Shown here: piece after piece, positions 4,601 to 54,327 of the stretch
How positions within the stretch are numbered: position 1 is the stretch's first letter
Layout: each line of letters opens with the position of its first letter
Assembly: GCF_902652985.1 (NCBI RefSeq)
Contig: NC_047024.1
Coordinates: forward strand, 22,692,001 to 22,756,000
DNA: 64,000 nt
Direction of reading: 5' to 3'
Origin: Pecten maximus
Taxonomy: Eukaryota
The notes under the pieces: model-generated
Seen by the model: the letters and a program-made list of their open reading frames with translations, nothing else
What the model was told of the DNA's origin: nothing
The model's database searches: none
Program-made: the position numbers and the translations under genes

Positions 4601-6249
4601 CGAATTCCGAGAAAATCGTCTCCGCAATAAATGAATGATTGGTTTTTCAGATGCGTTAGTTTTTTTCGACATTTCTTGACACTACTCTAATTACTGTTAG
4701 GTTGGTGTTTGTCTGATGACGGAGTTGCTGCATTCTGCGCGCCTTTCTCTCACTCACAGAGTTATTGCCCTTTGTTGTACTGCTGAAATGTGTTTCCGTT
4801 CAGCAGAATTCTGATGCTCCTGTTGAACTAGTCACCTACTGGGTGTAGTTTGGTAACACTAATGAATGTGAAATAAATACTTATTTCTAAGCCCTATTAA
4901 TTGAACATCTGTATCTATTAAAGTCATTTTTATTTGTTCCCTTGAATGACCCTTATGGACACGTTAGGTTGTATTGGAAAGTGGCTGCTAATGTAAATTT
5001 AAACGAACAATTACGAATAATATCATGAGACCTACCATGCTTTGTAGTATTTTAGAAAAAAAATCAGCACTTCAGAAAAAAATTCAGGAAAACATCGGGT
5101 AATGTAGAAAAGTAATATTGTCTGTTCATCACACCACTTTGTCCCTCCTTGTGTAGCAATCGTTCAAAGCTATCCTCTATAGAACAAAATATCAACACAT
5201 AAATTCTCATTGAGCACATTTAATTTTAATTATATTAACTTTTATATAAAAGGTCGAATTCTGTTCCCTGATTTTAGCAATCGCCGCAAGCCATCCTCTA
5301 TCGTTTAAGGCGGTCTGAACCGAAATTCTCACTGATCATATTTAATTCTAATTGTGTTAGCTTTTATATCTTTAGTGAGAATATATGTGTGCGTCTTCTG
5401 AAGTAGTTCCCTTTATAAGTCTATATCTGTGTGTTTGTTCTATCGTACGATTATTTCACAAGTTCTAGACTAGAACTAAATTGGATATGCATTGTTTGGT
5501 TCATTGAATTTCTAAGTACACATTTATGTCGGCTCAGCAAATAATTACAATGCATATCCAGTCAACCGTAGTAAGTAATGGGCGTTGGTTCAGATAACAA
5601 CAGTTAAGTATTCATATCATACTCTCAGATAATATGTCTGGGGACATTTGTCAAATAAATGTGAGAAAGTATAATTTAATTGGAAACCACATAAAGACAA
5701 CAGCCATTAACCACAAGTGGCAAGGCAAGCGACATGAATTCATGAAAAAGCGCATGACGTGTTGGAATTCAAATAGTATTCAACAGACTGAGAATACCTA
5801 AATTTTAATTGACAGATGTTCAACAAAGCTTGGTCCAGTATAAAAAACATATTTCTATTTTGACCTCATACTGAAAACTTCAAAACAAACTATTGAATTC
5901 GATAAGCTAATGTTTTTTTTCGTAAATGCCAACGGTACGGAACAAGGTAGTGTGTGAAAAGCAAACAGTATATAATTAGGCACATGGAAAGACCTTCATT
6001 GTGGATTATAATTGGCTAGTATTATTAAACAAGGACACTTTTATCTAGGCCAACTAATAACACCAATCAAGACAATAACAGTGAAAAAATGACTTGAAGG
6101 TGGGGCTGGTTACCCAATATCCATAAAACTCTGGGGGTAAAAGGCTGAAACTGCAAACAGCAATAGTGCATGCGATCAATACAATGAAACCAGGTACGAT
6201 GTAGGGAAGGGACCAAAGATATTAAGACATGGGTAACGGGGAGGGACTG

Positions 6250-7325
6250 GTAATGTAGTTAAGGGGGTACAGGGGAAGAAATGGGAACCAAGGTAATGAA
6301 GTTAAGAGGGTAGAGGGGAAGAAATGGGAACCAAGGAAATGAAGTTAAGAGGGTATAGGGGAAACAAGGTAATGGAGTTAAGGGGGTACAGGGGAAGAAA
6401 TGAGAACCAAAGTAATGGAGTTAAGGGGGTACAGGGGAGGAATTCGGAACTAAGGTAATGAAGTTAAAGGGGTACAGGGGAAGAAATGGGAACTAAAGTA
6501 ATGGAGTTAAGGCGGTAGAGGGGAAGAAATGGGAACCAAAGTAATGGAGTTAAGGGGGTACAGGGGAAGAAATGGGAACCAAGGTAACGGAGTTAAGGGG
6601 GTACAGGGGAAGAAATGGGAACCAAGGTAACGGAGTTAAGGGGCACAGGGGAAGAAATGGGAACCAAAGTAATGGAGTTAAGGTGGTACAGGGGAAGAAA
6701 TGGGAACCAAAGTAATGGAGTTAACGGGGGTACAGGGGAAGAAATGGGAACCAAAGTAATGGAGTTAAGGGGGTACAGGGGAAGAAATGGGAACTAAGGT
6801 AATGGAGTTAAGGGGGTACAGGGGAAGAAATGGGAACCAAAGTAATGGAGTTAAGGTGGTACAAGGGAAGAAATGGGAACCAAGGTAAAGGAGTTAAGGG
6901 GGTACAGGAGAAGAAATGGGAACCAAGATAATGAAGTTAAGGGGGTACAGGGGAAGAAATGGGAACCAAAGTAATGGAGTTAAGGGGGAACAGGGGAAGA
7001 AATGGGAACCAAGGTAATGAAGTTAAGGGAGTACAGGGGAAGAAATGGGAACCAAGGTAATGGAGTTAAGTGGCTACAGGGGAAGAAATGGGAACCAAGA
7101 TAATGGAGTTAAGGGGGTACAGGGGAAGAAATGGGAACCAAGGTAAAGGAGTTAAGGGGGTACAGGGGAAGAAATGGGAACCACAGTAATGAAGTTAAGG
7201 GGGTATAGGGGAAGAAATGGGAACCAAGGTAATGAAGTTAAGGGGATACAGGGGAAGAAATGGGAACCAAGGTAACGGAGTTAAGGGGGTACAGGGGAAA
7301 ATGGGAACCAAGGTAATGAAGACAG
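6250..7325 (+). repeat. 43-bp G-rich minisatellite, ~24-25 copies
   Basis: Unit GGGAACCAAGGTAATGGAGTTAAGGGGGTACAGGGGAAGAAAT; successive starts at 6531, 6574, 6617. Confidence 0.97.
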
Positions 7326-22500: not shown

Positions 22501-23880
22501 TCTAGTAAAACATGACCTGAACTTTTCCACTACGTGTGCTTCCATGTACGTCACACAACACAACAAAAAGTGTGTGGGTTGAGATAAAAACACAACACAG
22601 AAGAATGCATCTTGGGATGGGATTGAGAAATAGTGAGGTCTAATCGATAACGAATGTTAGTAAACAAACAGAAATCAATTGATACGAAGTCAGCAAAACT
22701 ATTCAGTCATTCTAGATTGGGGAGGTACATGTATAACTATCGATTTGTGTAATATTCCAGATCTGAGATAAATATGAGGTCGAGTCAGTGACGCATATGG
22801 GACACACATGTGTTAATGAATCAAGTAGTCACATGTTCTCCAACGTCATGTGTACGATACAACGCTTTAAATAGTTCAGTTTAACACATAATTACTTAAT
22901 AACACGACATTTTTCAATTTATTTTCGTTTTATATCAATACAAAATCAAATTTTAGTGTGTACGTTTTTGAACCGAGTTGTTGATGTGATATGTACATGC
23001 TTACTAGCTTCCGTCACAATTCCTAGTATTGTTCAAGTATACGGACTAGCTAACCCTTGTGTATGACAACCCAACTTGGCATTTACACGATATCTTATTT
23101 ATCTATATAAGATATTTCATTTTTTTAAAAGATATCTACTAGATTAGATATCTTATTTATTCTATTCAATGTAAGTTATCTTATTTAATTTTTATAATAT
23201 TTTTAAATACATAAAATAAGAGTAAATAAGATATCTTTTGAGGTATATAAGATATCTCATGTATTATGTAAGACTTCATATAAAAAATACCCGGGTATAA
23301 TATTTCTTATCAAGTATATAGGATATTGCATATAAAAAATAATTTGGTTGGCTACAATTTCAACATTGCTCCATAATAAATGACTTGCATTTGGCCTGTC
23401 ATACTTGTGGTTCATGTGACATATTCTGCAAACAAAGAAAACGTAAACAGGACATTTTAGAGCAACATTATCAGGGAACAAAATCAAATATTTCCTTTTA
23501 TAAAAAAAATAAAGATAAATAAACAACAACAAAAACAACAAGCAAACAAAATCCTGCAGTCGCTCTAACAGGAAAGGTGTAACATTATCTTAAATGAACA
23601 GACATAACATTCCGGAAATTGATAAGTACAGCAGACAAGTGGTATTCGGATTTAACACGGAGGTATGTCAAAGTGTAAATATGCATGATGGTATCGTACA
23701 TGACAGTATAGTGTGAAAAAACATATTTCACTGAAATATAATAATGTTTGTTCTGAAATTTTCATTTTTATCTTGAGATTTAAGATTTACTGAAACGTTT
23801 GCTTTTTTGGTTTTATTTACATATGTTTAAGTTGAAGATGTGCATATATAATTCTGGTTGATGCCTTAGGACTTTGGCAT

Positions 23881-38492: not shown

Positions 38493-39145
38493 AGGCTGCG
38501 GTGGCCGCGGTGGCCAAGTTGGCCCGACATTTTATCACTAGCCCTCCACCTCTTGGTTGTGAGTTCGAAACCAACTAGGGGCAGTTGCCAGGTACTGAAC
38601 GTAGGCCGATGGTTTAACTCAGGGTACTCTGGCTTTCCTACACCTCCAAGACATGGCACGTCCTTAAATGACAACTCTGGCTTTCCTACACCTCCAAAAC
38701 ATGGCACGTCCTTAAATGATAACTCTGGCTTTCCTACACCTCCAAGACATGGCACGTCCTTAAATGATAACTCTGGCTTTCCTACACCTCCAAGACATGG
38801 CACGTCCTTAAATGACAACTCTGGCTTTCCTACACCTCCAAAACATGGCACGTCCTTAAATGATAACTCTGGCTTTATTCCTACACCTCCAAAACATGGC
38901 ACGTGCTTAAATGATAACTCTGGCTTTATTCCTACACCTCCAAAACATGGCAAGTCCTCAAATGATAACTCTGGCTTTATTCCTACACCTCCAAAACATG
39001 GCATGTCCTCAAATGATAACTCTGGCTTTATTCCTACACCTCCAAAACATGGCACGTCCTTAAATGACAACTCTGGCTTTCCTACACCTCCAAAACATGG
39101 CACGTCCTTAAATGACCCTGGCTATTAATAGGACGTTTTAAACGA
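38493..39145 (+). mobile_element. tRNA-headed V-like SINE with an internal 10x tandem amplification (48/51-bp unit, 38626-39115)
   Basis: Head GCGGTGGCCG..GAGTTCGAAACC; GGGTACTCTGGCTTTCC; unit ACTCTGGCTTT(ATT)CCTACACCTCCAAAACATGGCACGTCCTTAAATGA(C/T)A; tail GACCCTGGCTATTAATAGGACGTT shared with S1. Confidence 0.85.
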
Positions 39146-43280: not shown

Positions 43281-44362
43281 AATGGCAGGATGCTAGCTTT
43301 TTATCCTCCATCACCTGTATATGACGCAAGTAACCAAAAGTATATACATAATTTACATAGTTAACGTTTTCGGTACTAACCCTAGCTGTGATTCTGACTT
43401 ACGTCAGTAAAGTGTGTACGGTAATACACACACAGACTGCGCACTAGTTATTTTACAACGTGGCCATGTGTGTTGGATGTTGTAATTAACCTGTTTGTAA
43501 ACAATCAATGAAGTCTGGTCTTAACATTCCGGATATATATATAGCTTCATGACGTCATTCCGATAAGTGTTAGGGATGTTTTATATTATGCTTGTATTCG
43601 TCTGGGGAAAAGTACTGGGCATTAATATCTTATGAAGGTGTTTTCAAAACAAACGGCGCAAATTCTAATTAACAAGTATGCGTTATTACATAATCAATGA
43701 TAGATTGATAATAATTATATAACTTCTTTCAAAAAAACTTCACTAAAATCTATTAAGAAAACATAGAAAAGACGTTTTTAATGTATTGGTACACTTCAAA
43801 ACAATTTTTCCTTGCAAAATCACAATAATATGATAGTCACCTAAAATATCTCTCCTACGGACATGTAAGAAAATCTAGCAAAGAAATACAGTACATGTTT
43901 CTATATAACGAAATCATTTAGAATTGAAATGGACAAGCTAAACTTTCACAAAAAATTCGCAAAATGCACCTAAATACAGACATTTTTCTCCAACAATATC
44001 ACTCGATCAATATAATTTTGTACATGAGAAAGCAACGAGTCCGATGTAGTGTTGAATCTACGTCCGATGTAGTAAAAGGACATAAAAACGGCCGTTCTGG
44101 GGAGGTTCCATGGATTAGAATAAAGTTGCTAGAAAGAAGAGAACCATGTTATGTGGGCAGCGGTACAACTACGTTCTCCCTACCTTCAGGGCAGGTTTAA
44201 AGTTTGACGTTACCGTCGTGGAAAAAGGTAACATCATAGGCTTCCCGTAGCACTCTGATGATTTAAGTTAGGGGAAGGGAAATAACTCCAACAGATGCTA
44301 GCGCTACATTCTATCAACAGACATTAGTGCGCGTGCCTGTCTTTGAATGCTGTAGTATCTTC

Positions 44363-44525
44363 CACAGGCGCTTGCATAGAAAATGCGATTTTCAAAAAAA
44401 AAAAAAAAAAAAAAATGATATGACAGTGGTATGTGTAATCTGTTATTTAACAGATTACACATACCACTGTCATATCAATTTTTTTTTTTTTTTTGAAAAT
44501 CGCATTTCCTATGCAAGCGCCTGTG
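44363..44525. mobile_element. Young 163-bp foldback MITE with 8-bp TSD (P/hAT-type)
   Basis: CACAGGCGCTTGCATAG...CTATGCAAGCGCCTGTG, almost entirely palindromic; TSD GTATCTTC at 44355-44362 and 44526-44533. Confidence 0.93.
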
Positions 44526-45184
44526 GTATCTTCCCGTGGCCGTGCGGAACAGATGCCGACTGTAGTGCAATGTTCATGTTGAACACCAAGATCGTCCTCA
44601 AAGGGGCGAATGCTCAACTTAAGACCAACAGCTAAGGAACCAATCAGGCTTAGGATTGTTTTTTTGTGGAAAAATAATTTGCTTCCGATTTTTCACACAA
44701 AAAAAAGAGAAGAAATTAATTGTTGCATCTATGGAGTTTAGAAAATGTTTTATCTGTTTTAGTGATGAAGAAAATAGTTTGATTCTTGCTTCAGTAAAGA
44801 GCAAAAGAACCCAGAAAGAAGAAAATTGCTGAATGAGGTCCGAAACAAAACATAATGTCGGTGACACAGGGACAGGAAACACATCTATCCTCTCCAATAT
44901 ATACTTGTATTATGACGTCTGATACAAAATATACAGGGATTTGACACACGCATAGATCCTCTCCCATAGGTAAATATATAACCCTTGTTAATGAAATCTG
45001 ATACCTGAAGTATGTCGGTGAAAAAGGCGACGAATATATAATTATATCAATCTCCTCCAAAACTTATATACTGCTTTAATGATGCCTGATACAAATTACG
45101 ATGTCAGCGACACAGGGACTTGATACACGTATCGACCTCCTCACAAACATATACAGGCTTCATTATGTGTTTGTTTAATGTACC

Positions 45185-45472
45185 TGTTGAAGGCGAATGC
45201 CGTTTAAACTTTGTGCACTACGTCATCAATTTCAGCGGACATCTAGACAAACGCCCACTGAGTATATATCAAACCTATGATAAGTATCGTAACTTGCCGG
45301 ATACATGGATCTTGTTTCTGAAGTGACGCATAAAAAAATCGGCTTTGATTTAGTATCCTGCCCGCGCAGGGACTCGAACCAGCGACCTCTCAGTGTCTAG
45401 GAGTCCTTAGGCTAGAGGGAAATTCCCGGCTAACCTCAGTTAGTTAGGTGGCCTTGTACTCTCTACTCAACA
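45185..45472 (-). mobile_element. TG..CA-bounded 288-bp unit containing a tRNA-like sequence (candidate Ajax-type solo LTR)
   Basis: Ends TGTTGA...TCAACA (6-bp IR). Minus strand at 45359-45395 reads GAGGTCGCTGGTTCGAGTCCCTGCGCGGGCA (T-arm/B box). No TSD found. Confidence 0.45.
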
Positions 45473-45639
45473 TATAATGAACATGATTAAATGAAAATTG
45501 ATTATGTCCTTGAACAATTAACTCGGCGACTATTTGCATTTAAAAGAACGCTAATTAAAGATAACAAAGAAATCATCACAAATAAACACGCATCCGTAGG
45601 CTGGCGTACACGTTCTTCTCTACTCTGGACGGAGACAAT

Positions 45640-45740
45640 AGTATGACGTCATGATACTGATGACGAAAGGTCATTTGTGACGTCACGTTCTTGTTGCTAT
45701 GCTGCTTAGCAATAGGCAAAGGCGGAGATGATTAGTCTCT
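45640..45740 (+). promoter_or_regulatory. Putative promoter of the compact gene
   Basis: Two perfect CRE palindromes TGACGTCA (45644-45651, 45678-45685), a half-site at 45661, RFX-like GTTGCTATG..CTTAGCAA, and Inr-like TTAGTC ~50 nt before the ATG. Confidence 0.45.
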
Positions 45741-45782
45741 CCCCAATTATCTACTTCTTATCTTAATTTTTGGATTACCACA

Positions 45783-46902
45783 ATGGATATCAAGATTTTC
45801 TTGATATTTGTGGTAATTCTGAACGCCATGCAGCAAGGCCCTGCTGCTTATCGGGACCTTAAGTGGTAAGTTTGGGACATTTTCTGTGATTTTTGTTTCT
45901 ACGTTGATTATACATGTATATCACGGTACCTAGATGCATTGATGGCACCCTTAAATTGTGTCGCGACATTTCACCTCAACTTTGTCACTTTATTTCTGTA
46001 GCGTGGAGCCCGAGCCAGGACATACCAAAAGATTGTTGTATTATTTCACCTCAAGAGAAATTGAGCAAGTCTGCCCAACGCAAGTCGAGCTGATGTGGGT
46101 AAGTATTGCATTCAATTAAGATACAGATTGATGTTGAAACGCATTGTAACTTGAAATGTATACATGGCTTGTAGTCGCGCTTATGCGTTTCGTGTAAATT
46201 TTATAGACGTATTTCCTTATCGAAGTTTGAATAATTCCTAATACCAGGAACATCGGATGGCTTAGAATTATCGAGGTTGATTATAACTTTTATTTGTTTT
46301 AGAGAATCGGAAATGATGTATTCCGGACGTTTCTGTGTGGTGTTATAACACTGATGTTGGTTTACACGTACGTGTGTGCACCGTCGATTGGAAACCGCGC
46401 CAAGAAGAGATGGACAACCAATGTTTGCATGTTCCAAGCATGGATAACTCGTAAGTAATATTGATATTCGTAACCACTTTCCCCAGTTCGTTTCGTTCAT
46501 AGGACAATAACGGTAAGATCCATTCGGCGCGTAATAATTTACGATATGTTAATTGTTGTGAACATTGCAATGTTTGAAGATGTGTTATAACACACATTAT
46601 CTGTTTCTACAGGCCGTTCCCTCTGTCGTTTCTGCGGAACTTCTCCATGCCAGGCCAAGAGAACATCCTGGAAGCGCTTCAGACTCCGTATCAAGAATGT
46701 GACTGATTTCGAGGAGCGATCCAATGCCATGAGGTTGTTCAGCCTCGGACTGGAGCTGTCCGTCGACCTGACAAAAGAACTTCCCCGGGATGAGCTGTAC
46801 TGGGCTAGGAAATACTGCGATCAATTCGAGGAGGACCACATGGTTCTATTCCCGCTGTGTATCCAGCGTCAAATCAATGACTGGTACCCATTGCCTCACT
46901 AG
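45783..46902 (+). CDS. Uncharacterised 205-aa predicted type I membrane protein with Cys-rich, P2X7-ballast/KolX-like cytoplasmic tail; exons 45783-45865, 46002-46098, 46303-46450, 46613-46902
   Basis: All three donors are GTAAGT; acceptors are polypyrimidine+YAG; phases 2,0,1 match; 618 nt with no internal stop. Protein: MDIKIFLIFVVILNAMQQGPAAYRDLKCVEPEPGHTKRLLYYFTSREIEQVCPTQVELMWRIGNDVFRTFLCGVITLMLVYTYVCAPSIGNRAKKRWTTNVCMFQAWITRRSLCRFCGTSPCQAKRTSWKRFRLRIKNVTDFEERSNAMRLFSLGLELSVDLTKELPRDELYWARKYCDQFEEDHMVLFPLCIQRQINDWYPLPH. Confidence 0.7.
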
Positions 46903-48811
46903 GTATGTACCCTGTCCCTCACAAATATACCCCTTTGTCCCTTGTCGGATAGGGAGTCCCCTTACGTACCCCTTCACCGGACTAAGTAATCTTTTACTCG
47001 CAAAATCATAACATGCCCATCACTAGGTAGGTAATTAAAAGTTCATTCAAATTGAAATTAATAATTGGAAATATATGTAACACAACATGAATAATCTGAT
47101 CTGAAATTCACTTTCATCAATATGAAAACTATATCACGTGACAAATATATCCTGTTTACGAGAGCGCAACTGCTGAACATGAACGTCAGTATTACGCTTT
47201 AATCTATTATTTCAATTTTTAAACGATTTTCTTCCAGATTTCTTGCAGTTTTTGGCGAATGTCGATGATGGAACCGAAGTGGCCGTGTTGACGTCATCGA
47301 TTGGTCGCAACCACGATTTATTTTATTCCTTTTCTGATAAATGAGAAATAGTGACCTAGAGATATTAATGTTGTTTTCGTTACTTAGGTACATGTATGTT
47401 TTACCTTGTAAAATTGTTTATTTTGTAGAGAGGAACATTGTACACAGATGACAAGCCGATTATAACTATTCTATGTTGGCCAGATACAAGTATATAATGT
47501 TTCGTAATGTTTCTATGGTAACCATTCACACGTGGTATAATAAAATGTCTGAACCTGACTCAACTGTTTCAGTTATATTTTTGTAAACGTCTGCCACACA
47601 TATACACATGTTCCTTGAAGTCTAATACAAATTATGATGTCGGCGTCACAAGGTCTGGACACACTTACGGATCATATCCGACATATATGTGTTTTTCGGC
47701 ATAGCTGTATAATTTTCTTTTGGCCCCGGATATGACGCGACAGGTGGCGTTACTGGTCAAGATGAAGTATGTGATTGGTCAATGTAGCGGTAAAGGCAAA
47801 ATGCAGATATGCAGTTAAAGACGAAACAAAATTAAGATTGAATGCAAGCTGAATAAGTGGATGTATCTATTCAAATGACACATTAATAAAATCATATTCC
47901 TGATTCAAATGCAGTCTAATTACCACCAAAAATGATTCAAACTGATATAATTTTGTTATCCGTGCTGAAACTGCGCATTTATTAATTAGTTCGTTAATTT
48001 ATCTCACCAGCAGTTTTACATTATAACCACCAGCATTAAAACTATCTCGTTTATCTTTTTTAAAGATATTTCTTGTTATGATTAAGTCTGATACAAAATA
48101 CAATGTCGGTGACACAGGGACTGGACACACGCATAGATCCGATCCCATATGCATGCATGTGTAATTGTATACTTGTTTAAAGAAATCTGATATAACGATA
48201 GTATGTCGGTGAAAAAGGCGCTGAACACATGCATCGATTTCCTCCAAAACATATACTTGTTTAATGAAATCTGATATAAATCATTATGTCGGCGTCGCAG
48301 GTTTGGGCACACTTACGGATTCTGTCCGACATATATATTCTTTCTGAATGAAGCCCGATACAAAATATAATGTCGAGGACGCGGGGATTGGACAGACGTA
48401 TTGATCCTGTCCGATATACATAAACTTGCTGAATGAAGTCTGATACAAAATAAAATTATCGGTGAAACAGTGACTGAGCACACACAAATCGATCCCCTCA
48501 AACATATAGATACCAAGTATGAAGTCGGTGACACAGGGGCTGGACACATGTCGATCCTCCACCACACATAAATACTTGTTTAATGAAATCTGATGGAAAT
48601 AATTACGTCGGCAGCACAGGGTCTGCAAACATGCATCGCTTCTCTCCCACATAGTATACCTGAAAATATGTTTGAGGGAAAGGATGCATGTATCCAGCCC
48701 CTGTGTCACCGAAATCATATTTTGCATCAGACTTTATTAATCGTGTATGTACACATGTGGGAGATGATTGATGCGTGTGTCGAAATTTTGACGATCCTCT
48801 CTCGCACATAT

Positions 48812-49378: not shown

Positions 49379-50561
49379 ATATACTTGTTTAATGAAGTCT
49401 GATAGAAAGCATTATGTCGACAGCACAGGGTCTGCAAACACAATCGATTCTCTCCAACATATTATACTTGTATATATGTTTGAGAGAATCGGTGTGTGGG
49501 TCTCGCCCCTGTGACATTATATCAGACCTCATAAAACAAGTATATATCTTATCTATATGTATGGAAGGGGATTGATGCATATATCTAAAACCTGTGCCAC
49601 CGACCTAATATTGGTAAAAGACTTCATATTACATACATATATGTACATTGTATGTGGGAGAAGATATAAGCGTGTGTCCAGCCCCTGTGACACATTTTGT
49701 ATCGGACTTTCTTTTACAAAATACATATGTAGGTGAGAGAGGATGTATGTCTGTGTCCAGCCCCTGTGCCGCCGACAATATAATTTGTATCAGACTACAT
49801 TAAAACAAGTATACATACATGTGGATGAGTATAGAAGAGTGTGTCAAGCCCCAGTGCCGCCGACATTATTATCTATGCTGAAAATAGTCAACATCTGTTC
49901 ACTAGCGGTTATCTCCCCTATATCAGGATACGGAAAAATGGGAAGTGGTTTTGTCTTCCAAGCTGGTATTGATATTATATTATACACATAGTGTTATTTT
50001 ATATAGTATCTATATCTGTATCTATGTATATTTCTTTTTCTATAGCTTGATCTATATGTATACCTAATTTTAGATATTCGCAAAAGGAACAAAAGAACAT
50101 TATGAGGAGCATATTGGTTTCTGTATCGTTTGGAAGATAACGAAACCAAACATGGTAACGAGATCACCCATTTTCACCGTACCGAACCGGTGGTAGGTAA
50201 CTATGGTTACCGACCGCCAACATGGCCGATTTACCTACTTCCGGTTCTGTACAGTGATTTTAAAGCATTTATTATGAGGGAATGGGTTGTGACATATACC
50301 AATATTGATTTAGAATTGAGTACTTCTAGAAACAGAAGTTTAATAAAACTAGTAGATACAAAAATCAGCCGTTAAAAAAACTGGATATATGCAATTCAAA
50401 CATGATAGTGATAATTTAGTGATAAATTAACGTTTGTGTAGAGAGTCAATGACTGCGGCACTAGCATGTCAAATTCTGATAGAGTGCTGTCCCCTTGCTT
50501 ATTCAACATGGCGCCGACTTCTCGGCCACTGTACCGCGTGGACTGGCAAATTGTTAGCCAT

Positions 50562-51740
50562 GTACTCAAGGAAGTCTGAAAGAGTGAAGAAATTGTCAAG
50601 AACATTGGGGGAACCAAAATCGGTGCTCTCCACAGACATATTCATGGCGGAAGGTGTGGTATCGCAATTGGACGATTGCTCAGAATGTGAGGCTGAGGTT
50701 CAGGGCGAGAAAAATGTTGTTCTCGAAGTCAAATCGCCCAATATCAAGACATTACCGCATGTAAATGATCATGATGGTATCAGGGTTACTCCGGGTAGCG
50801 GTCGGGGGCGTGGCTACATACCCCGCTACCACAAACGAAAGTGGGATTGCTTAATAGATTAAGTCAGGCTAGTGAACATTCGGAACTAGATCATTGCGAG
50901 GCCGAGTTGGCTACGATACAGTTAGAAGAAAAAAAGATGCGTTTGAGAAGGGAAATAGATGCAACTAGGCAACGACTGTTGGGTTTCCAGCTCCCGACCC
51001 CTAACGGGATTCCTCTGGGGGCCCTCCCCAGCGAAGCGTGTCAACATACCTGCCACCAGCATTACAGGCGCATAATTCTAACAACGCGTCCGACAATGTT
51101 CAGCGACAACCCCCATCCAACAATGACAGCGAGTATTTCTTGCAAAACAATTCCTAGGAATCTCGGCCAGGTCGAACATTCAGATAAAAAGACCAAAACA
51201 TATAAAATTGTTGATTTCCTTTGGGATGAGCCTAGTGTCAAGGATAATGATATTCAAGATACATTGACAATCGAGGCAGGGCCGCAACACGAAACCAGAT
51301 TTACAAAATATATCAGTCGAACAATGGGGTTATGGGGCCGTGTCTATTCTCCTTCATATGCTGGAACAGAAGGACATCAATGTCACAGGTGTTAATCAAT
51401 ATCTGAAGAACATGCAACGGACCTTTCGCTTCTTTCACAGATACACGCGCCCCAGTGTGCTGTGTTATGATAAAGAATTCAGGGAGGCCCAAAACACGAG
51501 GATTTGGCATGGAACGCCTCCAGAAGGGATATATAGGACTTCCAGCTGGTCCAGAAACCGATGAAGTCGATGTCCGAGGCACCGACAGCGTCGAAGCACC
51601 GCAGAGGCCCATATCTACCCGGCGGGAAAAAAGAGATCTGTTGTAGGTTTAATATGGAAGCCTGTGTTTAAGAACTGTCGGTTGGCTCATAACTGTAGTC
51701 TATGTTTTGGGGACTACCCTGATTTAAAACACCCATAAAA
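50562..51740 (+). pseudogene. Ngaro gag-like ORF1 (frameshifted)
   Basis: ORF fragments containing YKIVDFL, VLCYDKEFREAQ and a terminal Cys/His knuckle (ICCRFN...C...NCRLAHNCSLCFG) typical of DIRS/Ngaro gag. Confidence 0.65.
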
Positions 51741-51744
51741 AAAA

Positions 51745-53440
51745 CTAGAGCCGGTCCCTGGGCCGTCTCAGGGTAACTGGGCCGAGGAGGTTTTCATTGC
51801 CAGCCCCCTGAAATGGACAGAATGGAAGGAGCTTTTACCACATGGTGATGTAGATAGAGACTATATTCTTCATGGTGTCAAATATGGTTTTAAGTTGTTG
51901 GACTGTGATCTTTCACAGATACCGGTGATGGAAACAAACAGCTACTCTTCATGTTCACAGTATTTTGATTTGGTTGAGCAACAGATACAGTATGAGCTTA
52001 GGCAGGGTAACTACAAAATAACTGAGACAACACCGCGTATAATAAGTGTTCTTTGGGCGATACCAAAATCAGAAACAAAAATCAGACTAATACATGATGC
52101 TAGTCAGCCAAGACAAAAATCGTTAAATCACTATAGTTTGGCGAAATCAAACTGCTCGTGTAGTTACATGGATATAAGGGAGGCAATTAAGCATGTCACA
52201 CCTGGGTGTTTCTTAGCCAAGTTCGATTTGTGCAGTGCATATCGATCAGTGCCGATTAGTCCCATGAATTATTCCGCAACAGGCCTAAAGTGGACATTTT
52301 CAGGGCACAATGCCCCCACATATATGTTTGATTGTCGCCTGCCGTTCGGAGATTCACGAAGCCCATAGATTTTTCAGAGACTAAGTGCAGCGGTGTGCCG
52401 TATCCTGAAACACAAATTTGGTTTTACCGTTATTTCGTACCTTGATGATTTTCTCATTCTGGAAAAATCAGAGGAGCGGAGCGTTGCCATTTGGCACTTA
52501 CGACATTACTCCGCGTGTTACGACAGCTCGGTTTCTCGATCAACTGGTCCAAGCTTGTCGGCCCGACCACCCGTTTGGTGTTTCTAGGTATAGCGATTGA
52601 CACGGTAAAAATGTCTAGAATGTCCCGAGGACACACTGTGCGCGTTCACAAACCTGCTTCAGTCTTATGCCGAAAAGAAACGCGCCAGCAAAGGTCAGCT
52701 CGAAACATTGTGTGGGAAACTCAGCTGGGCGTCGCAGGTTATCTGTGGGGGCAGGGCTTTTCTCCGTAGGATGATTTCATTAAAAGACTCTATACAATTG
52801 CGAAAGCAAAAAGTCTTACTGTCTTCCAACTTTCGAAAAGGTGGCTTGCGTTTCTGAAAACATTTAATGGTAGCTGTAGCATCCTGGACTCCAAATCAGT
52901 TACGTCGTTACAAACGGATGCATGTAACATGGGTGCAGGGCTTACTATCATGACGATTATATGTACACTAACTGGCCTCTTGATATGCCACCTATGTGCG
53001 ACCAACATATAAATGTGAAGGAACTAGTGGCGATATTCTTGGCAGTGTGTCGCTGGTGTGAACATTTTCGGGACCGAAAAGTCATTATATACATCGACAA
53101 GAAGTCAGCAGCCTCGTGGGTTAATAAGGGCTTATCCCGGTGTGAAGTTAGCATGCATTTGTTGCGCATCCTTTTCTGGTTTTGTGCTTATTTTAACATC
53201 AGCATAAAGTGTGTATACCTGTCAGGTGCGCGTAACATTAGAGCAGACAGGAGCTCTCGATTACACGAACCAAACACGTTAAGTAAACTGTATGACCTGC
53301 TACCATCATTGTTCTTGCTACCGTTTTCTGCAGAACATCTTGTTTACCACATGTCGTACCGTTTTCTCTTCTTCAGATGGAATTCAAGAATTGGTACTGC
53401 TATCTACGGCGGAAACCCTGAAAAGAAATGCGTGGGCTGA
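51745..53440 (+). pseudogene. Ngaro reverse transcriptase / RNase H (stops and frameshifts)
   Basis: RT motifs IRLIHDAS, KFDLCSAYR, RLPFG, YLDD (~52438), FLGIAID; RNase H motifs QTDA, HINVKELVAI, NIRADRSSR. In-frame TAG at 52366-52368. Confidence 0.9.
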
Positions 53441-54327
53441 TTCGACCAGCGCCACGTACGCCACGCACCTCAAGTGCTACCACAGCTTTTGCGCAGCTAT
53501 GAACTATGATCCGGTGCCAGCGTCGTCACAAATGCTTCAAGTGTATATCGCGTATTTGACAACAGTGAATGGTTTGAAATATCAGTCGATTAGACAATAC
53601 TTACTATACTACAATAGTGACTCACATCCATAAGGCGTCTGGTTTGGCGGACCCTTTTGAGGGCGGCTATATATATAAAGTGACTCAGGAGTTAAAAGGT
53701 TTAAAGCGGGTTGTAGGGATAGCGCAATCCACAGTGGATACAATAACTCCGCAGTTACTGAAGTCAATCTATGGGAGTCTATCTTGGTTATGCCTCAGTG
53801 ATTTTTCTTTCTGGTATGCATGTCTAGCAGCATTCTTCGGCTTGCTCCGTCCTGGTAACATCACAGTTCGTGGACCTTTTAACCAATCAAATGATTTACG
53901 GCGAGTGGGTGCTATTTTGTATTCGTGCCGGTATATACTATCCTCGTTAAAGACCAAGACAATTCAATTTAGGGAGAGGGAAGTAGAAGTCCCTCTGCCC
54001 CGTATAATGTCCGATAGTGGGTTGTGCCCTGCACGTGCTCTTCAAACATTGTTAGAGAAATCACCACGGGCAGACCCTTTGGGTCCACTTTTTCTGAATG
54101 ACAGTGACGGGGCGCTGAGTTACAAGGAATTCAGGAACAAACTGTCTTTATGTTTTAATTCAGTCGGAATCAACAATTGTAACTATAAAGGTCACTCATT
54201 ACGGCGGGGAGGACCCTCCTGGCTCTCCAAGCTGGGCGTCCCTATTGACATGATCAAAACATTGGGGCTCTGGGCCAGTGACGCAGTATACCGTATATTC
54301 CCGATTCATGCAGTCAATCATAATTAA
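53385..54327 (+). pseudogene. Ngaro tyrosine recombinase (frameshifted)
   Basis: N-terminal SAM-like region (AWADSTSATY...LKYQSIRQYL), AFFGLLRPGN, KTKT, CPARAL, GHSLRRGG, LGLWASDAVYR. Confidence 0.9.

What the first reader, a model, noticed from the sequence alone, without database searches (positions are those of the whole stretch)
45783..46902. Hidden intact 4-exon gene: single-pass receptor-like protein with a P2X7-ballast/KolX-like cytoplasmic domain
Seen: three consensus GTAAGT donors, good acceptors, short introns (136-204 nt) and an unbroken 205-codon frame in otherwise decayed repeat DNA. The ORF track shows only its last 67 aa. The protein has a hydrophobic N-terminus, a ~45-aa ectodomain with one Cys pair, a TM helix (FLCGVITLMLVYTYVCA) followed by RAKKR, then CxxCxxxPC and a terminal PLCIQRQINDWYP. 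Known: the P2X7 cytoplasmic ballast ends in P-x-C-x4-I-x3-F-P (PSCCRWRIRKEFP), the same spacing, and Kolobok KolX proteins carry a related domain. Inference: a Zn-binding ballast-like module fused to a signal peptide and TM helix as a minimal membrane protein, an architecture I do not recognise. The homology rests on one short motif.
Basis: partly seen in the sequence, partly recalled or inferred. Interest (0 to 1): 0.85.

Follow-up and report, generated by a model that had tools for sequence, protein, structure and literature searches.

The report
Scallop-specific single-pass membrane protein gene
This is a real, spliced and transcribed 205-residue membrane-protein gene of the king scallop, already in RefSeq as an uncharacterized protein. 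It belongs to a scallop-only multigene family whose conserved four-cysteine cytoplasmic tail may be a stripped-down relative of the P2X7 'ballast' zinc domain, though that is unproven.

Summary
Four exons (45783-45865, 46002-46098, 46303-46450, 46613-46902), three GTAAGT donors and a 205-codon frame are all present. Transcript contigs from at least three studies show every predicted junction. They also show a fourth intron in the 3'UTR directly after the stop codon, and a poly(A) tail near 47556.

The gene is not hidden. Its product is 100% identical to RefSeq 'uncharacterized protein LOC117336822 [Pecten maximus]'. It belongs to a family found only in Pectinidae, apart from three metagenome fragments. 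This genome holds about 31 copies with an intact exon 4 and about 15 fragments. Paralogs keep exon lengths, splice sites and frame. dN/dS is below 1 and lowest in the cytoplasmic half.

The architecture is supported: signal peptide, roughly 45-residue ectodomain with two cysteines, transmembrane helix, conserved C-terminal domain. That domain has four near-invariant cysteines and folds confidently on its own (pLDDT 88).

Homology to the P2X7 ballast/KolX domain is not established:
- Pfam P2RX7_C gives no hit.
- Profile-profile comparison gives P about 0.11-0.125.
- Foldseek finds nothing.

Verdict: an ordinary real gene of an undescribed lineage-specific family, with a ballast relationship at about even odds.

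The parts
45158..45782 (+). Upstream region conserved among paralogs (promoter plus 5'UTR). It carries two TGACGTCA (CRE-like) palindromes at 45644 and 45678. The transcription start was not mapped.
   Evidence: Paralog homology begins at about 45158-45165 in copies on several chromosomes. Palindromes. A paralog transcript contig extends at least 53 nt upstream of the ATG (table 7).
45783..45865 (+). Exon 1 coding part: ATG plus the hydrophobic signal-peptide-like segment (residues 1-27, and 2 nt of the Cys28 codon).
   Evidence: Junction 45865|46002 is seen in an X4 contig. The 83-nt length and GTAAGT donor are kept in paralogs.
45866..46001 (+). Intron 1 (136 nt, GT..AG).
46002..46098 (+). 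Exon 2: ectodomain, Cys28 to Trp60, with the conserved CVEPEPG...C-P motif.
   Evidence: Junction 46098|46303 is seen in X1/X11, X3 and X4.
46099..46302 (+). Intron 2 (204 nt, GT..AG).
46303..46450 (+). Exon 3: juxtamembrane segment, TM helix, basic stop-transfer (RAKKR) and a linker helix (residues 61-109).
   Evidence: Hydropathy. AF2 predicts helices at 55-85 and 91-108. Junction 46450|46613 is seen in X1/X11 and X4.
46451..46612 (+). Intron 3 (162 nt, GT..AG).
46613..46902 (+). Exon 4: the whole conserved cytoplasmic Cys4 domain (residues 111-205) and the stop codon TAG (46900-46902).
   Evidence: The domain alone gives AF2 pLDDT 88 and pTM 0.79.
46903..47237 (+). Intron 4 (335 nt, GT..AG), lying in the 3'UTR and starting immediately after the stop codon.
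   Evidence: Joint 46900->47236 with 'cut +2' in X1/X11 and X4. The acceptor ...ttccag|at is read.
47238..47556 (+). Exon 5 (3'UTR only), with AATAAA at 47539-47544 and a poly(A) site near 47556.
   Evidence: Contigs cover 47236-47538/47556, with a loose end of A's behind 47556. Sequence.
23560..23662 (+). Alternative upstream exon (donor GTATGT at 23663), joined to exon 2 in one transcript contig so that exon 1 is skipped. This form has no in-frame ATG before Met59.
   Evidence: A 103-nt loose end in X1/X11 matches 23631-23660 exactly. Sequence and donor. Frames. This rests on one contig only.

Best explanation
The locus is the Pecten maximus gene LOC117336822. It is one recent copy of a Pectinidae-restricted, tandemly and dispersedly amplified family of 195-207-residue type I single-pass membrane proteins.

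Shown: the gene is intact, transcribed, spliced at the predicted sites and polyadenylated. The family is under purifying selection, strongest on the cytoplasmic exon-4 domain.

Inferred, with my odds for each step:
- Topology (about 0.8): a cleaved signal peptide puts a roughly 40-45-residue stub with two conserved cysteines outside the cell. One TM helix followed by a basic stop-transfer sequence puts residues ~90-205 in the cytosol.
- Metal site (about 0.6): the four near-invariant cysteines (C114, C117, C122, C192) tie the N-terminal knuckle of the domain to its last helix through one tetrahedral Zn site. This stabilises a small four-helix module.
- Ancestry (about 0.45): that module is a reduced, single-Zn descendant of the KolX/ZCD 'ballast' domain seen in P2X7 residues 476-595.
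- Function (about 0.3): the protein acts as a membrane-tethered scaffold or accessory subunit. The stub contacts a partner or ligand, and the Zn domain plus its basic linker recruit cytosolic partners.
For: Gene reality:
- The product is identical to RefSeq XP protein P0048.
- All junctions, the 3'UTR intron and the poly(A) tail appear in contigs.
- The X1 contigs differ from the window by two synonymous changes and none in the UTR exon. The nearest paralogs differ by at least 11, 19 and 40 positions in exon 4, exon 3 and the UTR exon.

Family:
- 49-55 exon-4 matches in the own genome, about 31 of them complete and without stops.
- Exon structure and splice sites are kept even in a paralog whose exon-4 domain is 68% identical, L019.
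- dN/dS is 0.24-1.0 overall and 0.20-0.69 in the C-terminal half, with intron divergence about equal to dS.
- Only Pectinidae and three metagenome fragments appear among 1.84 billion representative proteins.
- The tree shows species-specific clades.

Topology: hydropathy peaks at residues 1-19 and 66-88, and RAKKR follows the TM segment. AF2 predicts matching helices.

Domain: C114, C117, C122 and C192 are invariant or nearly so. Exon 4 alone folds with pLDDT 88 and pTM 0.79.

Ballast link:
- That is the same region that defines KolX similarity (PMC9587614).
- Like ZCD (PMC7016195), the domain is C-terminal. Like the P2X7 ballast, it is encoded by a single exon.
- hhalign's best alignment is colinear, pairing CGTxPC with C..xPC and FPxCIQxxIxxWYP with vPSCvxxIRxxFP.
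Against: - No Pfam P2RX7_C hit for any exon piece or any of 27 full-length members at E<=10.
- hhalign probability is 0.5% with P 0.11. The empirical column-shuffle P is 0.125.
- Foldseek finds nothing in the PDB or BFVD.
- The family lacks the WCxC and CC cysteines, the AYR..W..G.LG.G.RR block and the Y[ST]G tail of ZCD (PMC7016195).
- The own genome's 34 genuine P2RX7_C hits never overlap family loci.
- Zn binding, topology and any partner remain untested.
- The run type 'RNA' is only a guess by the index, although intron-less contigs ending in poly(A) argue for RNA.
Confidence: 0.45

Rival explanations
1. [not shown]
For: - No sequence method detects a relationship: Pfam, hhalign at P 0.11, the shuffle control at 0.125, profiles against PDB sequences, and the ESM Atlas, which gave no usable hit.
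- The best structural Z anywhere is only 4.1, so the fold has no clear solved relative.
- The exhaustive HMMER search finds only scallop proteins and three fragments.
- Other Zn-containing chains (Nurr1, RNF112) also appear among the top structural rows. This suggests a class effect rather than a specific relationship.
Against: P2X7 was named as the target before the test, and it lands in the top 5 of 48,161 chains with the aligned range being exactly the KolX-like region (PMC9587614). In addition, the best alignment to ZCD pairs two Cys clusters in the same order, and the domain, like ZCD, sits at the C-terminus. Kojima and colleagues also describe piggyBac-encoded KolX-tail relatives that have lost most of the cysteines, so reduced versions do exist (PMC9587614).
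Confidence: 0.45
2. The 2.4-kb unit (45158-47592) is cargo of, or itself behaves as, a mobile or satellite-associated element. Its many copies would then reflect selfish spread rather than host function. This does not exclude either reading of the domain.
For: - Copies on chromosomes C2, C3, C10, C14 and C16 share similar homology limits, about 45158 and 47592.
- The gene is flanked on both sides by ~84-bp repeat arrays, and the same repeat lies next to paralogs elsewhere.
- Tandem arrays have periods of 3.5 kb and 5.7 kb.
- KolX itself is a transposon protein (PMC9587614).
Against: - No transposase ORF lies in or beside the unit, and no terminal inverted repeats were found at its limits.
- The unit is an ordinary gene with promoter, four introns and a poly(A) signal.
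- Exons evolve under purifying selection while introns drift at about dS.
- The family is conserved across four scallop genera with the same exon structure.
Confidence: 0.08
3. The frame is a chance ORF or a dead pseudogene copy.
For: Some family copies are broken. L007, L012 and L018 are frameshifted, L015-L017 are 5'-truncated, and about 15 fragments carry stops.
Against: This copy is intact, and it is transcribed and correctly spliced with locus-specific matches. It is identical to the RefSeq model, and its differences from paralogs are biased towards synonymous sites.
Confidence: 0.02

Closest known systems
P2X7 cytoplasmic ballast / ZCD domain (Pfam P2RX7_C, PF20478; PANTHER PTHR36981)
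   Same: Both are Cys-rich and presumably Zn-binding, sit at the extreme C-terminus and are encoded by one terminal coding exon. As in P2X7, the domain is tethered to a membrane protein. The terminal motif has the same spacing (P-x-C-x4-I-x3-[FY]-P). There is a weak structural match to residues 476-585.
   Different: - Four conserved cysteines instead of 7-8.
- No PxWCxCx2C cluster, no CC pair, no AYR..W..G.LG.G.RR block (GDP-site residues) and no Y[ST]G tail.
- About 95 residues instead of about 120-200.
- No Pfam or hhalign signal.
- The membrane part is a single-pass stub, not a P2X channel.
KolX proteins of Kolobok (Kol0) transposons, and domesticated NANOR-like proteins
   Same: Both are short proteins ending in the ballast-type domain, and both are multi-copy in invertebrate genomes. 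The scallop genome itself holds at least 34 genuine P2RX7_C hits, some as identical copies on several chromosomes.
   Different: KolX/ZCD proteins have no signal peptide or TM helix (PMC7016195) and travel with a DDD/E transposase (PMC9587614). This family has both membrane elements, introns and its own promoter, has no transposase nearby, and is not detected by the KolX/P2RX7_C profile.
[quoted passage not shown]
   Same: They are a precedent for reduced ballast-tail relatives that keep the C-terminal part but have lost cysteines.
   Different: I know them only from the paper's description and made no sequence comparison here. They are transposon-borne and not membrane proteins.
Platelet glycoprotein Ib beta (small type I accessory subunit with LRRCT cap, TM helix and short tail)
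   Same: The overall plan is shared: signal peptide, small disulfide-containing ectodomain, one TM helix, basic juxtamembrane segment. The best, though non-significant, PDB sequence hit aligns the family's AYRDLTCVEPEPG..RLL.Y...E....CP with the last LRRCT loop of GPIb-beta (E 0.81).
   Different: There are no LRR, LRRNT or LRRCT Pfam hits in any member, only two ectodomain cysteines, and an unrelated cytoplasmic domain. I treat this as a lead only.

Membership tests
P2RX7_C / ZCD ballast domain (PF20478) | Match to the Pfam P2RX7_C profile above its gathering score (23.5 bits). | tested here: not met
   No hit at E<=10 for the four exon translations, for seven relatives, or for all 27 members of A1 including P0048. 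The same profile finds 34 other places in this genome.
P2RX7_C / ZCD ballast domain (PF20478) | Cys cluster 1, PxWCxCx2C (PMC7016195). | tested here: not met
   The family has C114-x2-C117 only. There is no W-C-x-C.
P2RX7_C / ZCD ballast domain (PF20478) | Cys cluster 2, LCCRx3GxCITT[ST] (PMC7016195). | tested here: inconclusive
   The family has C117-G-T-x-P-C122-Q-V, a single Cys in place of CC. hhalign pairs it with oyster C-R-Q-S-P-C-I-T, but without significance.
P2RX7_C / ZCD ballast domain (PF20478) | Cys cluster 3, [LIV]PSC[CS]x3IRx2[FY]Px5Y[ST]G (PMC7016195). | tested here: inconclusive
   F189, P190, C192, I197 and P202 are invariant or nearly so, with the same spacing (P-x-C-x4-I-x3-[FY]-P). 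The Arg and the Y[ST]G tail are absent, since the protein ends 3 residues after P202.
P2RX7_C / ZCD ballast domain (PF20478) | AYR-x-[FY]-x2-W-x2-G-x-LG-x-G-x-RR block carrying the GDP-site residues. | tested here: not met
   It is invariant in the ZCD alignment A4 and absent from the family. R145-x2-A148 in ERSNAM is the only faint echo.
P2RX7_C / ZCD ballast domain (PF20478) | Significant profile-profile similarity. | tested here: not met
   hhalign probability is 0.5% with P 0.11. Of 200 column-shuffled controls, 12.5% reach the real score.
P2RX7_C / ZCD ballast domain (PF20478) | Ballast fold (P2X7 residues 476-595). | tested here: inconclusive
   [not shown]
P2RX7_C / ZCD ballast domain (PF20478) | Domain at the extreme C-terminus of the protein. 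| tested here: met
   Exon 4 encodes residues 111-205, ending at the stop codon. The rule for ZCD is stated in PMC7016195.
KolX (Kolobok Kol0 transposon protein) | Encoded inside a Kolobok element next to a DDD/E transposase. | tested here: not met
   No ORF of 130 aa or more lies within 3 kb of the gene except one at 48284-48727 (-), which sits in the ~84-bp repeat array and was not scanned. Pfam finds no transposase in 8 of the window's 11 ORFs of at least 130 aa. No inverted terminal repeats were found at the unit's limits.
Type I single-pass membrane protein | N-terminal cleavable signal peptide, one TM helix, positive-inside. | tested here: inconclusive
   Hydropathy windows at residues 1-19 and 66-88, with RAKKR after the TM segment. 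AF2 predicts helices at 3-23 and 55-85. All of these are conserved in the family. SignalP and DeepTMHMM were not available, and the cleavage site is not predicted.
LRRCT-capped receptors (PF01463) | Match to LRRCT or LRR profiles. | tested here: not met
   No LRR or LRRCT family appears among the Pfam hits of 27 members at E<=10. The only signal is a PDB profile hit to GPIb-beta at E 0.81.

The most novel reading that the evidence does not exclude
Scallops independently did what jawed vertebrates did with P2X7. A KolX/ZCD ballast-type domain from a Kolobok transposon was captured as the terminal exon of a membrane-protein gene. It was then pared down to a single Cys4 Zn site and amplified to dozens of copies. 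That would make this family a natural 'minimal membrane-tethered ballast' and the first transmembrane ZCD protein outside vertebrates.
Probability: 0.4. Interest if true: 0.6.

Novelty: new variant of a known kind. Interest (0 to 1): 0.4.

Why it matters
The function of the P2X7 ballast is still unknown (PMC9859053, PMC9574498). Outside vertebrates, ZCD proteins were reported to lack transmembrane regions (PMC7016195). A second, independent membrane-tethered and much smaller version would give a simple model for what the Zn-pinned core does, and a second example of a transposon protein being captured by a membrane-protein gene.

If the domain is unrelated, the result is more modest. It is then an undescribed, scallop-only, rapidly duplicating family of small membrane proteins with a confidently folding domain that has no solved structural relative. 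That pattern is common in lineage-specific receptor-type gene families and would be worth an expression survey.

For the scan itself, the lesson is that the 'hidden' gene was already in RefSeq.

Tried and rejected
- Pfam on the exon pieces, on relatives and on all family members gave no meaningful family. The weak Zn_ribbon_IS1595, Fer4_11 and RAG1_imp_bd hits in 2-3 members each (E 0.008-0.04) are treated as noise from CxxC and basic stretches.
- PDB sequence searches with exon 4, A1 and A3 gave nothing significant.
- Foldseek against the PDB with both models, and against BFVD with the domain model, gave nothing.
- pdb_via had only six chains to re-examine and found nothing.
- VIA wide on the full-length model was swamped by the long TM helix hairpin.
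- The ESM Atlas, queried with the whole protein and with residues 108-205, gave no usable hit.
- A local hhalign against a shallow P2RX7_C alignment from this genome gave probability 1.2%. The deeper alignment gave 0.5%.
- The profile search with the remote fragments included found no bridging sequences and nothing outside Pectinidae.
- The metagenome fragments P0006, P0008 and P0009 are short genomic pieces of the same family from marine samples, not ZCD intermediates.
- A processed retrocopy as the source of the spliced contigs was considered and rejected. All genomic copies align colinearly with their introns, and the contigs carry locus-specific UTR sequence and a poly(A) tail.
- McCarthy 2019, which names the Zn ligands, is not held. 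The ligand identities are therefore not cited.
- No earlier scan notes exist for this place.

Full report
**Observation.** Reading 45500-47200 and joining the proposed exons in a local script gives 83+97+148+290 = 618 nt. That is 205 codons plus TAG. GTAAGT donors lie at 45866, 46099 and 46451, the acceptors end in AG at 46001, 46302 and 46612, and the introns are 136, 204 and 162 nt. The mechanical ORF list shows only the last 67 aa. Hydropathy peaks lie at residues 1-19 and 66-88. The window has no N.

**How the spliced model was handled.** Exons were searched one by one by reference. The joined translation was computed only inside local scripts. Full-length searches used the database protein P0048, which turned out to be identical to the model. 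Read laying was given 2,401 letters.

**The gene is real and expressed.** Four runs were laid on 45300-47700.
- Contigs skip exactly 45866-46001 (X4), 46099-46302 (X1/X11, X3, X4) and 46451-46612 (X1/X11, X4), all GT..AG.
- A fourth intron, 46903-47237, begins directly behind the stop codon. It is followed by a 3'UTR exon (47238 to about 47556).
- That exon ends 12 nt after an AATAAA (47539-47544), with a run of A's in one contig.
- X1 and X11 give identical contigs and probably hold the same data, so I count three independent studies.
- The index only guesses that these runs are RNA. Intron-less, polyadenylated contigs argue that they are.
- The X1 contigs differ from the window by two synonymous changes, and by none in the UTR exon apart from two small indels. 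The closest paralogs differ at 11 or more, 19 or more, and 40 or more positions in exon 4, exon 3 and the UTR exon. This locus itself is therefore transcribed.
- X4's contigs carry many more differences and come from paralogs.

**The gene is not hidden.**
- An exhaustive HMMER search with exon 4 found nine representatives. The named ones are scallop proteins.
- A search with the 202-aa relative P0002 returned 43 proteins. All are 'uncharacterized' or 'hypothetical', from Pecten maximus, Mizuhopecten yessoensis, Ylistrum balloti and Argopecten irradians.
- P0048, 'uncharacterized protein LOC117336822 [Pecten maximus]', matches the model at 100% over all 205 residues.
- The genome (918,306,378 bases, 3,983 contigs; window = C10:22692001-22756000) is therefore P. 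maximus.
- No paper in the library mentions these loci.

**Family.**
- The own genome has 49-55 exon-4 matches. About 31 are complete without stops and about 15 are fragments or broken.
- Copies lie in tandem arrays (C10 17.69-17.71 Mb at about 5.7 kb, C2 and C3 at about 3.5 kb, and C14) and singly on other chromosomes.
- Eleven close paralogs keep the 83/97/148/290 exon lengths, the donors, the acceptors and the frame. A paralog 68% identical in the exon-4 domain (L019) keeps the same plan at 83/97/136/293.
- L007, L012 and L018 are frameshifted, and L015-L017 lack the 5' exons.
- Pairwise dN/dS is 0.24-1.0. It is 0.20-0.69 in residues 93-205 and 0.26-1.48 in residues 1-92. Intron divergence (0.12-0.16) is about equal to dS.
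- A maximum-likelihood tree shows species-specific clades. The window's gene sits in an all-P. maximus clade with 100/100 support.
- A. irradians 205-206-aa members found later were not in that tree.
- Beyond Pectinidae there are only three short fragments from marine metagenomes. They are pieces of the same family.

**Protein.** Alignment A1 shows these conserved features:
- a conserved signal-peptide-like N-terminus;
- an ectodomain motif, AYRDLTCVEPEPGY...C-P, with two cysteines;
- a TM helix and a basic stop-transfer sequence;
- a cytoplasmic part with near-invariant C114, C117, C122, R145, M149, F152, G155 and L156, and the terminal F189-P190-x-C192-I-Q-x2-I197-x4-P202.

AF2 on the full length gives pLDDT 75. 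Exon 4 alone gives pLDDT 88 and pTM 0.79, with helices at 31-53, 60-66, 73-78 and 81-90 of the domain. Four conserved cysteines on a cytosolic domain make one tetrahedral Zn site the natural reading. I could not inspect coordinates, so this is inference.

**Is it a ballast/KolX domain?** Rump et al. (PMC7016195) define ZCD by three Cys clusters. They note that non-vertebrate ZCD proteins are short, lack TM regions and carry the domain at the C-terminus. Kojima et al. (PMC9587614) show that KolX resembles P2X7 residues 476-595, with 7 cysteines and 2 Zn.

Tests against the relationship:
- Pfam P2RX7_C finds nothing in any family member, yet it finds 34 other places in this genome. None of those coincides with a family locus.
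- hhalign of the family's C-terminal alignment against a 20-row alignment of P2RX7_C-type domains, most carrying precomputed Pfam PF20478, and against A4, gives probability 0.5% and P 0.11.
- In 200 column-shuffled controls, 12.5% reach the real score.
- Foldseek finds nothing.

Evidence for the relationship:
- Against that, the score is tied with unrelated chains. Other Zn-containing proteins are among them, and 476-585 is simply the whole resolved stretch behind the disordered loop.
- The end points would fit CxxC on C479/C482 and C192 on C572 (P2X7 numbering from my memory of the sequence, not checked with a tool). hhalign's best path is colinear.

I put genuine relatedness at about 45%.

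**Mechanism.**
- Shown: transcription, splicing, and conservation under purifying selection.
- Inferred: type I topology, a Cys4 Zn site, and a role as a membrane-tethered scaffold or accessory subunit.

The faster-evolving outer half and the species-specific expansions fit a recognition or accessory role. They do not prove one.

**Mobility.** Paralog homology runs from about 45158 to about 47592 in copies on several chromosomes. The unit is flanked by ~84-bp repeat arrays that also accompany other copies. No transposase or terminal inverted repeat was found. I regard satellite-mediated or segmental duplication as likelier than transposition.

**Verdict.** The 'hidden' claim is wrong, and the ballast homology is unproven with one weak positive. 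The locus is a member of an undescribed scallop-specific family. Interest is moderate.

Noticed in passing
window 23560-23662 (+): An upstream exon 22 kb away (donor GTATGT at 23663) is joined to exon 2 in one transcript contig (X1/X11), skipping exon 1. That form has no in-frame ATG before Met59. It would be non-coding, or would encode a protein without the signal peptide and ectodomain.
   Followed up: partly
window 44818-45152, 47600-47688, 48066-48656: Arrays of an ~84-bp repeat flank the gene on both sides. Weak matches to the same repeat lie beside family copies on C10, C14, C16 and C2. It may drive duplication of the unit.
   Followed up: partly
window 47689-48080: A ~390-bp interspersed repeat is present at 95-96% identity on many chromosomes. 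It looks like a young SINE- or MITE-like element inserted into the 84-bp array just downstream of the gene.
   Followed up: no
window 44362-44526: Nested near-perfect inverted repeats (57 nt at 91% and 47 nt at 98%) lie around an A/T run, giving a hairpin-forming, MITE-like structure.
   Followed up: no
window 6249-7318: A 43-bp tandem repeat of 25 copies at 89% identity. It coincides with a strong positive GC and AT skew in the 6-8 kb bin.
   Followed up: no
window 38626-39115: A 48-bp tandem repeat of 10 copies at 95% identity. It gives long spurious ORFs on both strands.
   Followed up: no
window 50434-54327 (+): A run of ORFs lies in a block of higher G+C (43-44%). The last one (53617-54327) has a weak Phage_integrase hit (E 0.0024). 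This may be a decayed tyrosine-recombinase (DIRS/Crypton-like) element.
   Followed up: partly
L021-L040 (own genome, e.g. C9:30450226-30450567): The genome holds at least 34 genuine P2RX7_C (KolX/ZCD) hits, including identical 159-aa ORFs on three or more contigs. This fits recently active Kolobok-type elements.
   Followed up: partly
P0001 (paralog LOC117336551, C10): The RefSeq model of a paralog ends ...MVLFPL and then reads into 3'UTR-exon sequence. That is an isoform using a donor inside exon 4, which removes the terminal C-I-Q..WYP motif. An X4 contig also shows a variant joint, 46902->47257.
   Followed up: no
residues 21-55 of the protein (window 45843-46098): The ectodomain motif AYRDLTCVEPEPG..RLL.Y...E....CP aligns with the last loop of the LRRCT cap of platelet GPIb-beta (E 0.81, not significant). 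It may be a relic of an LRR receptor. Pfam gives no support.
   Followed up: partly
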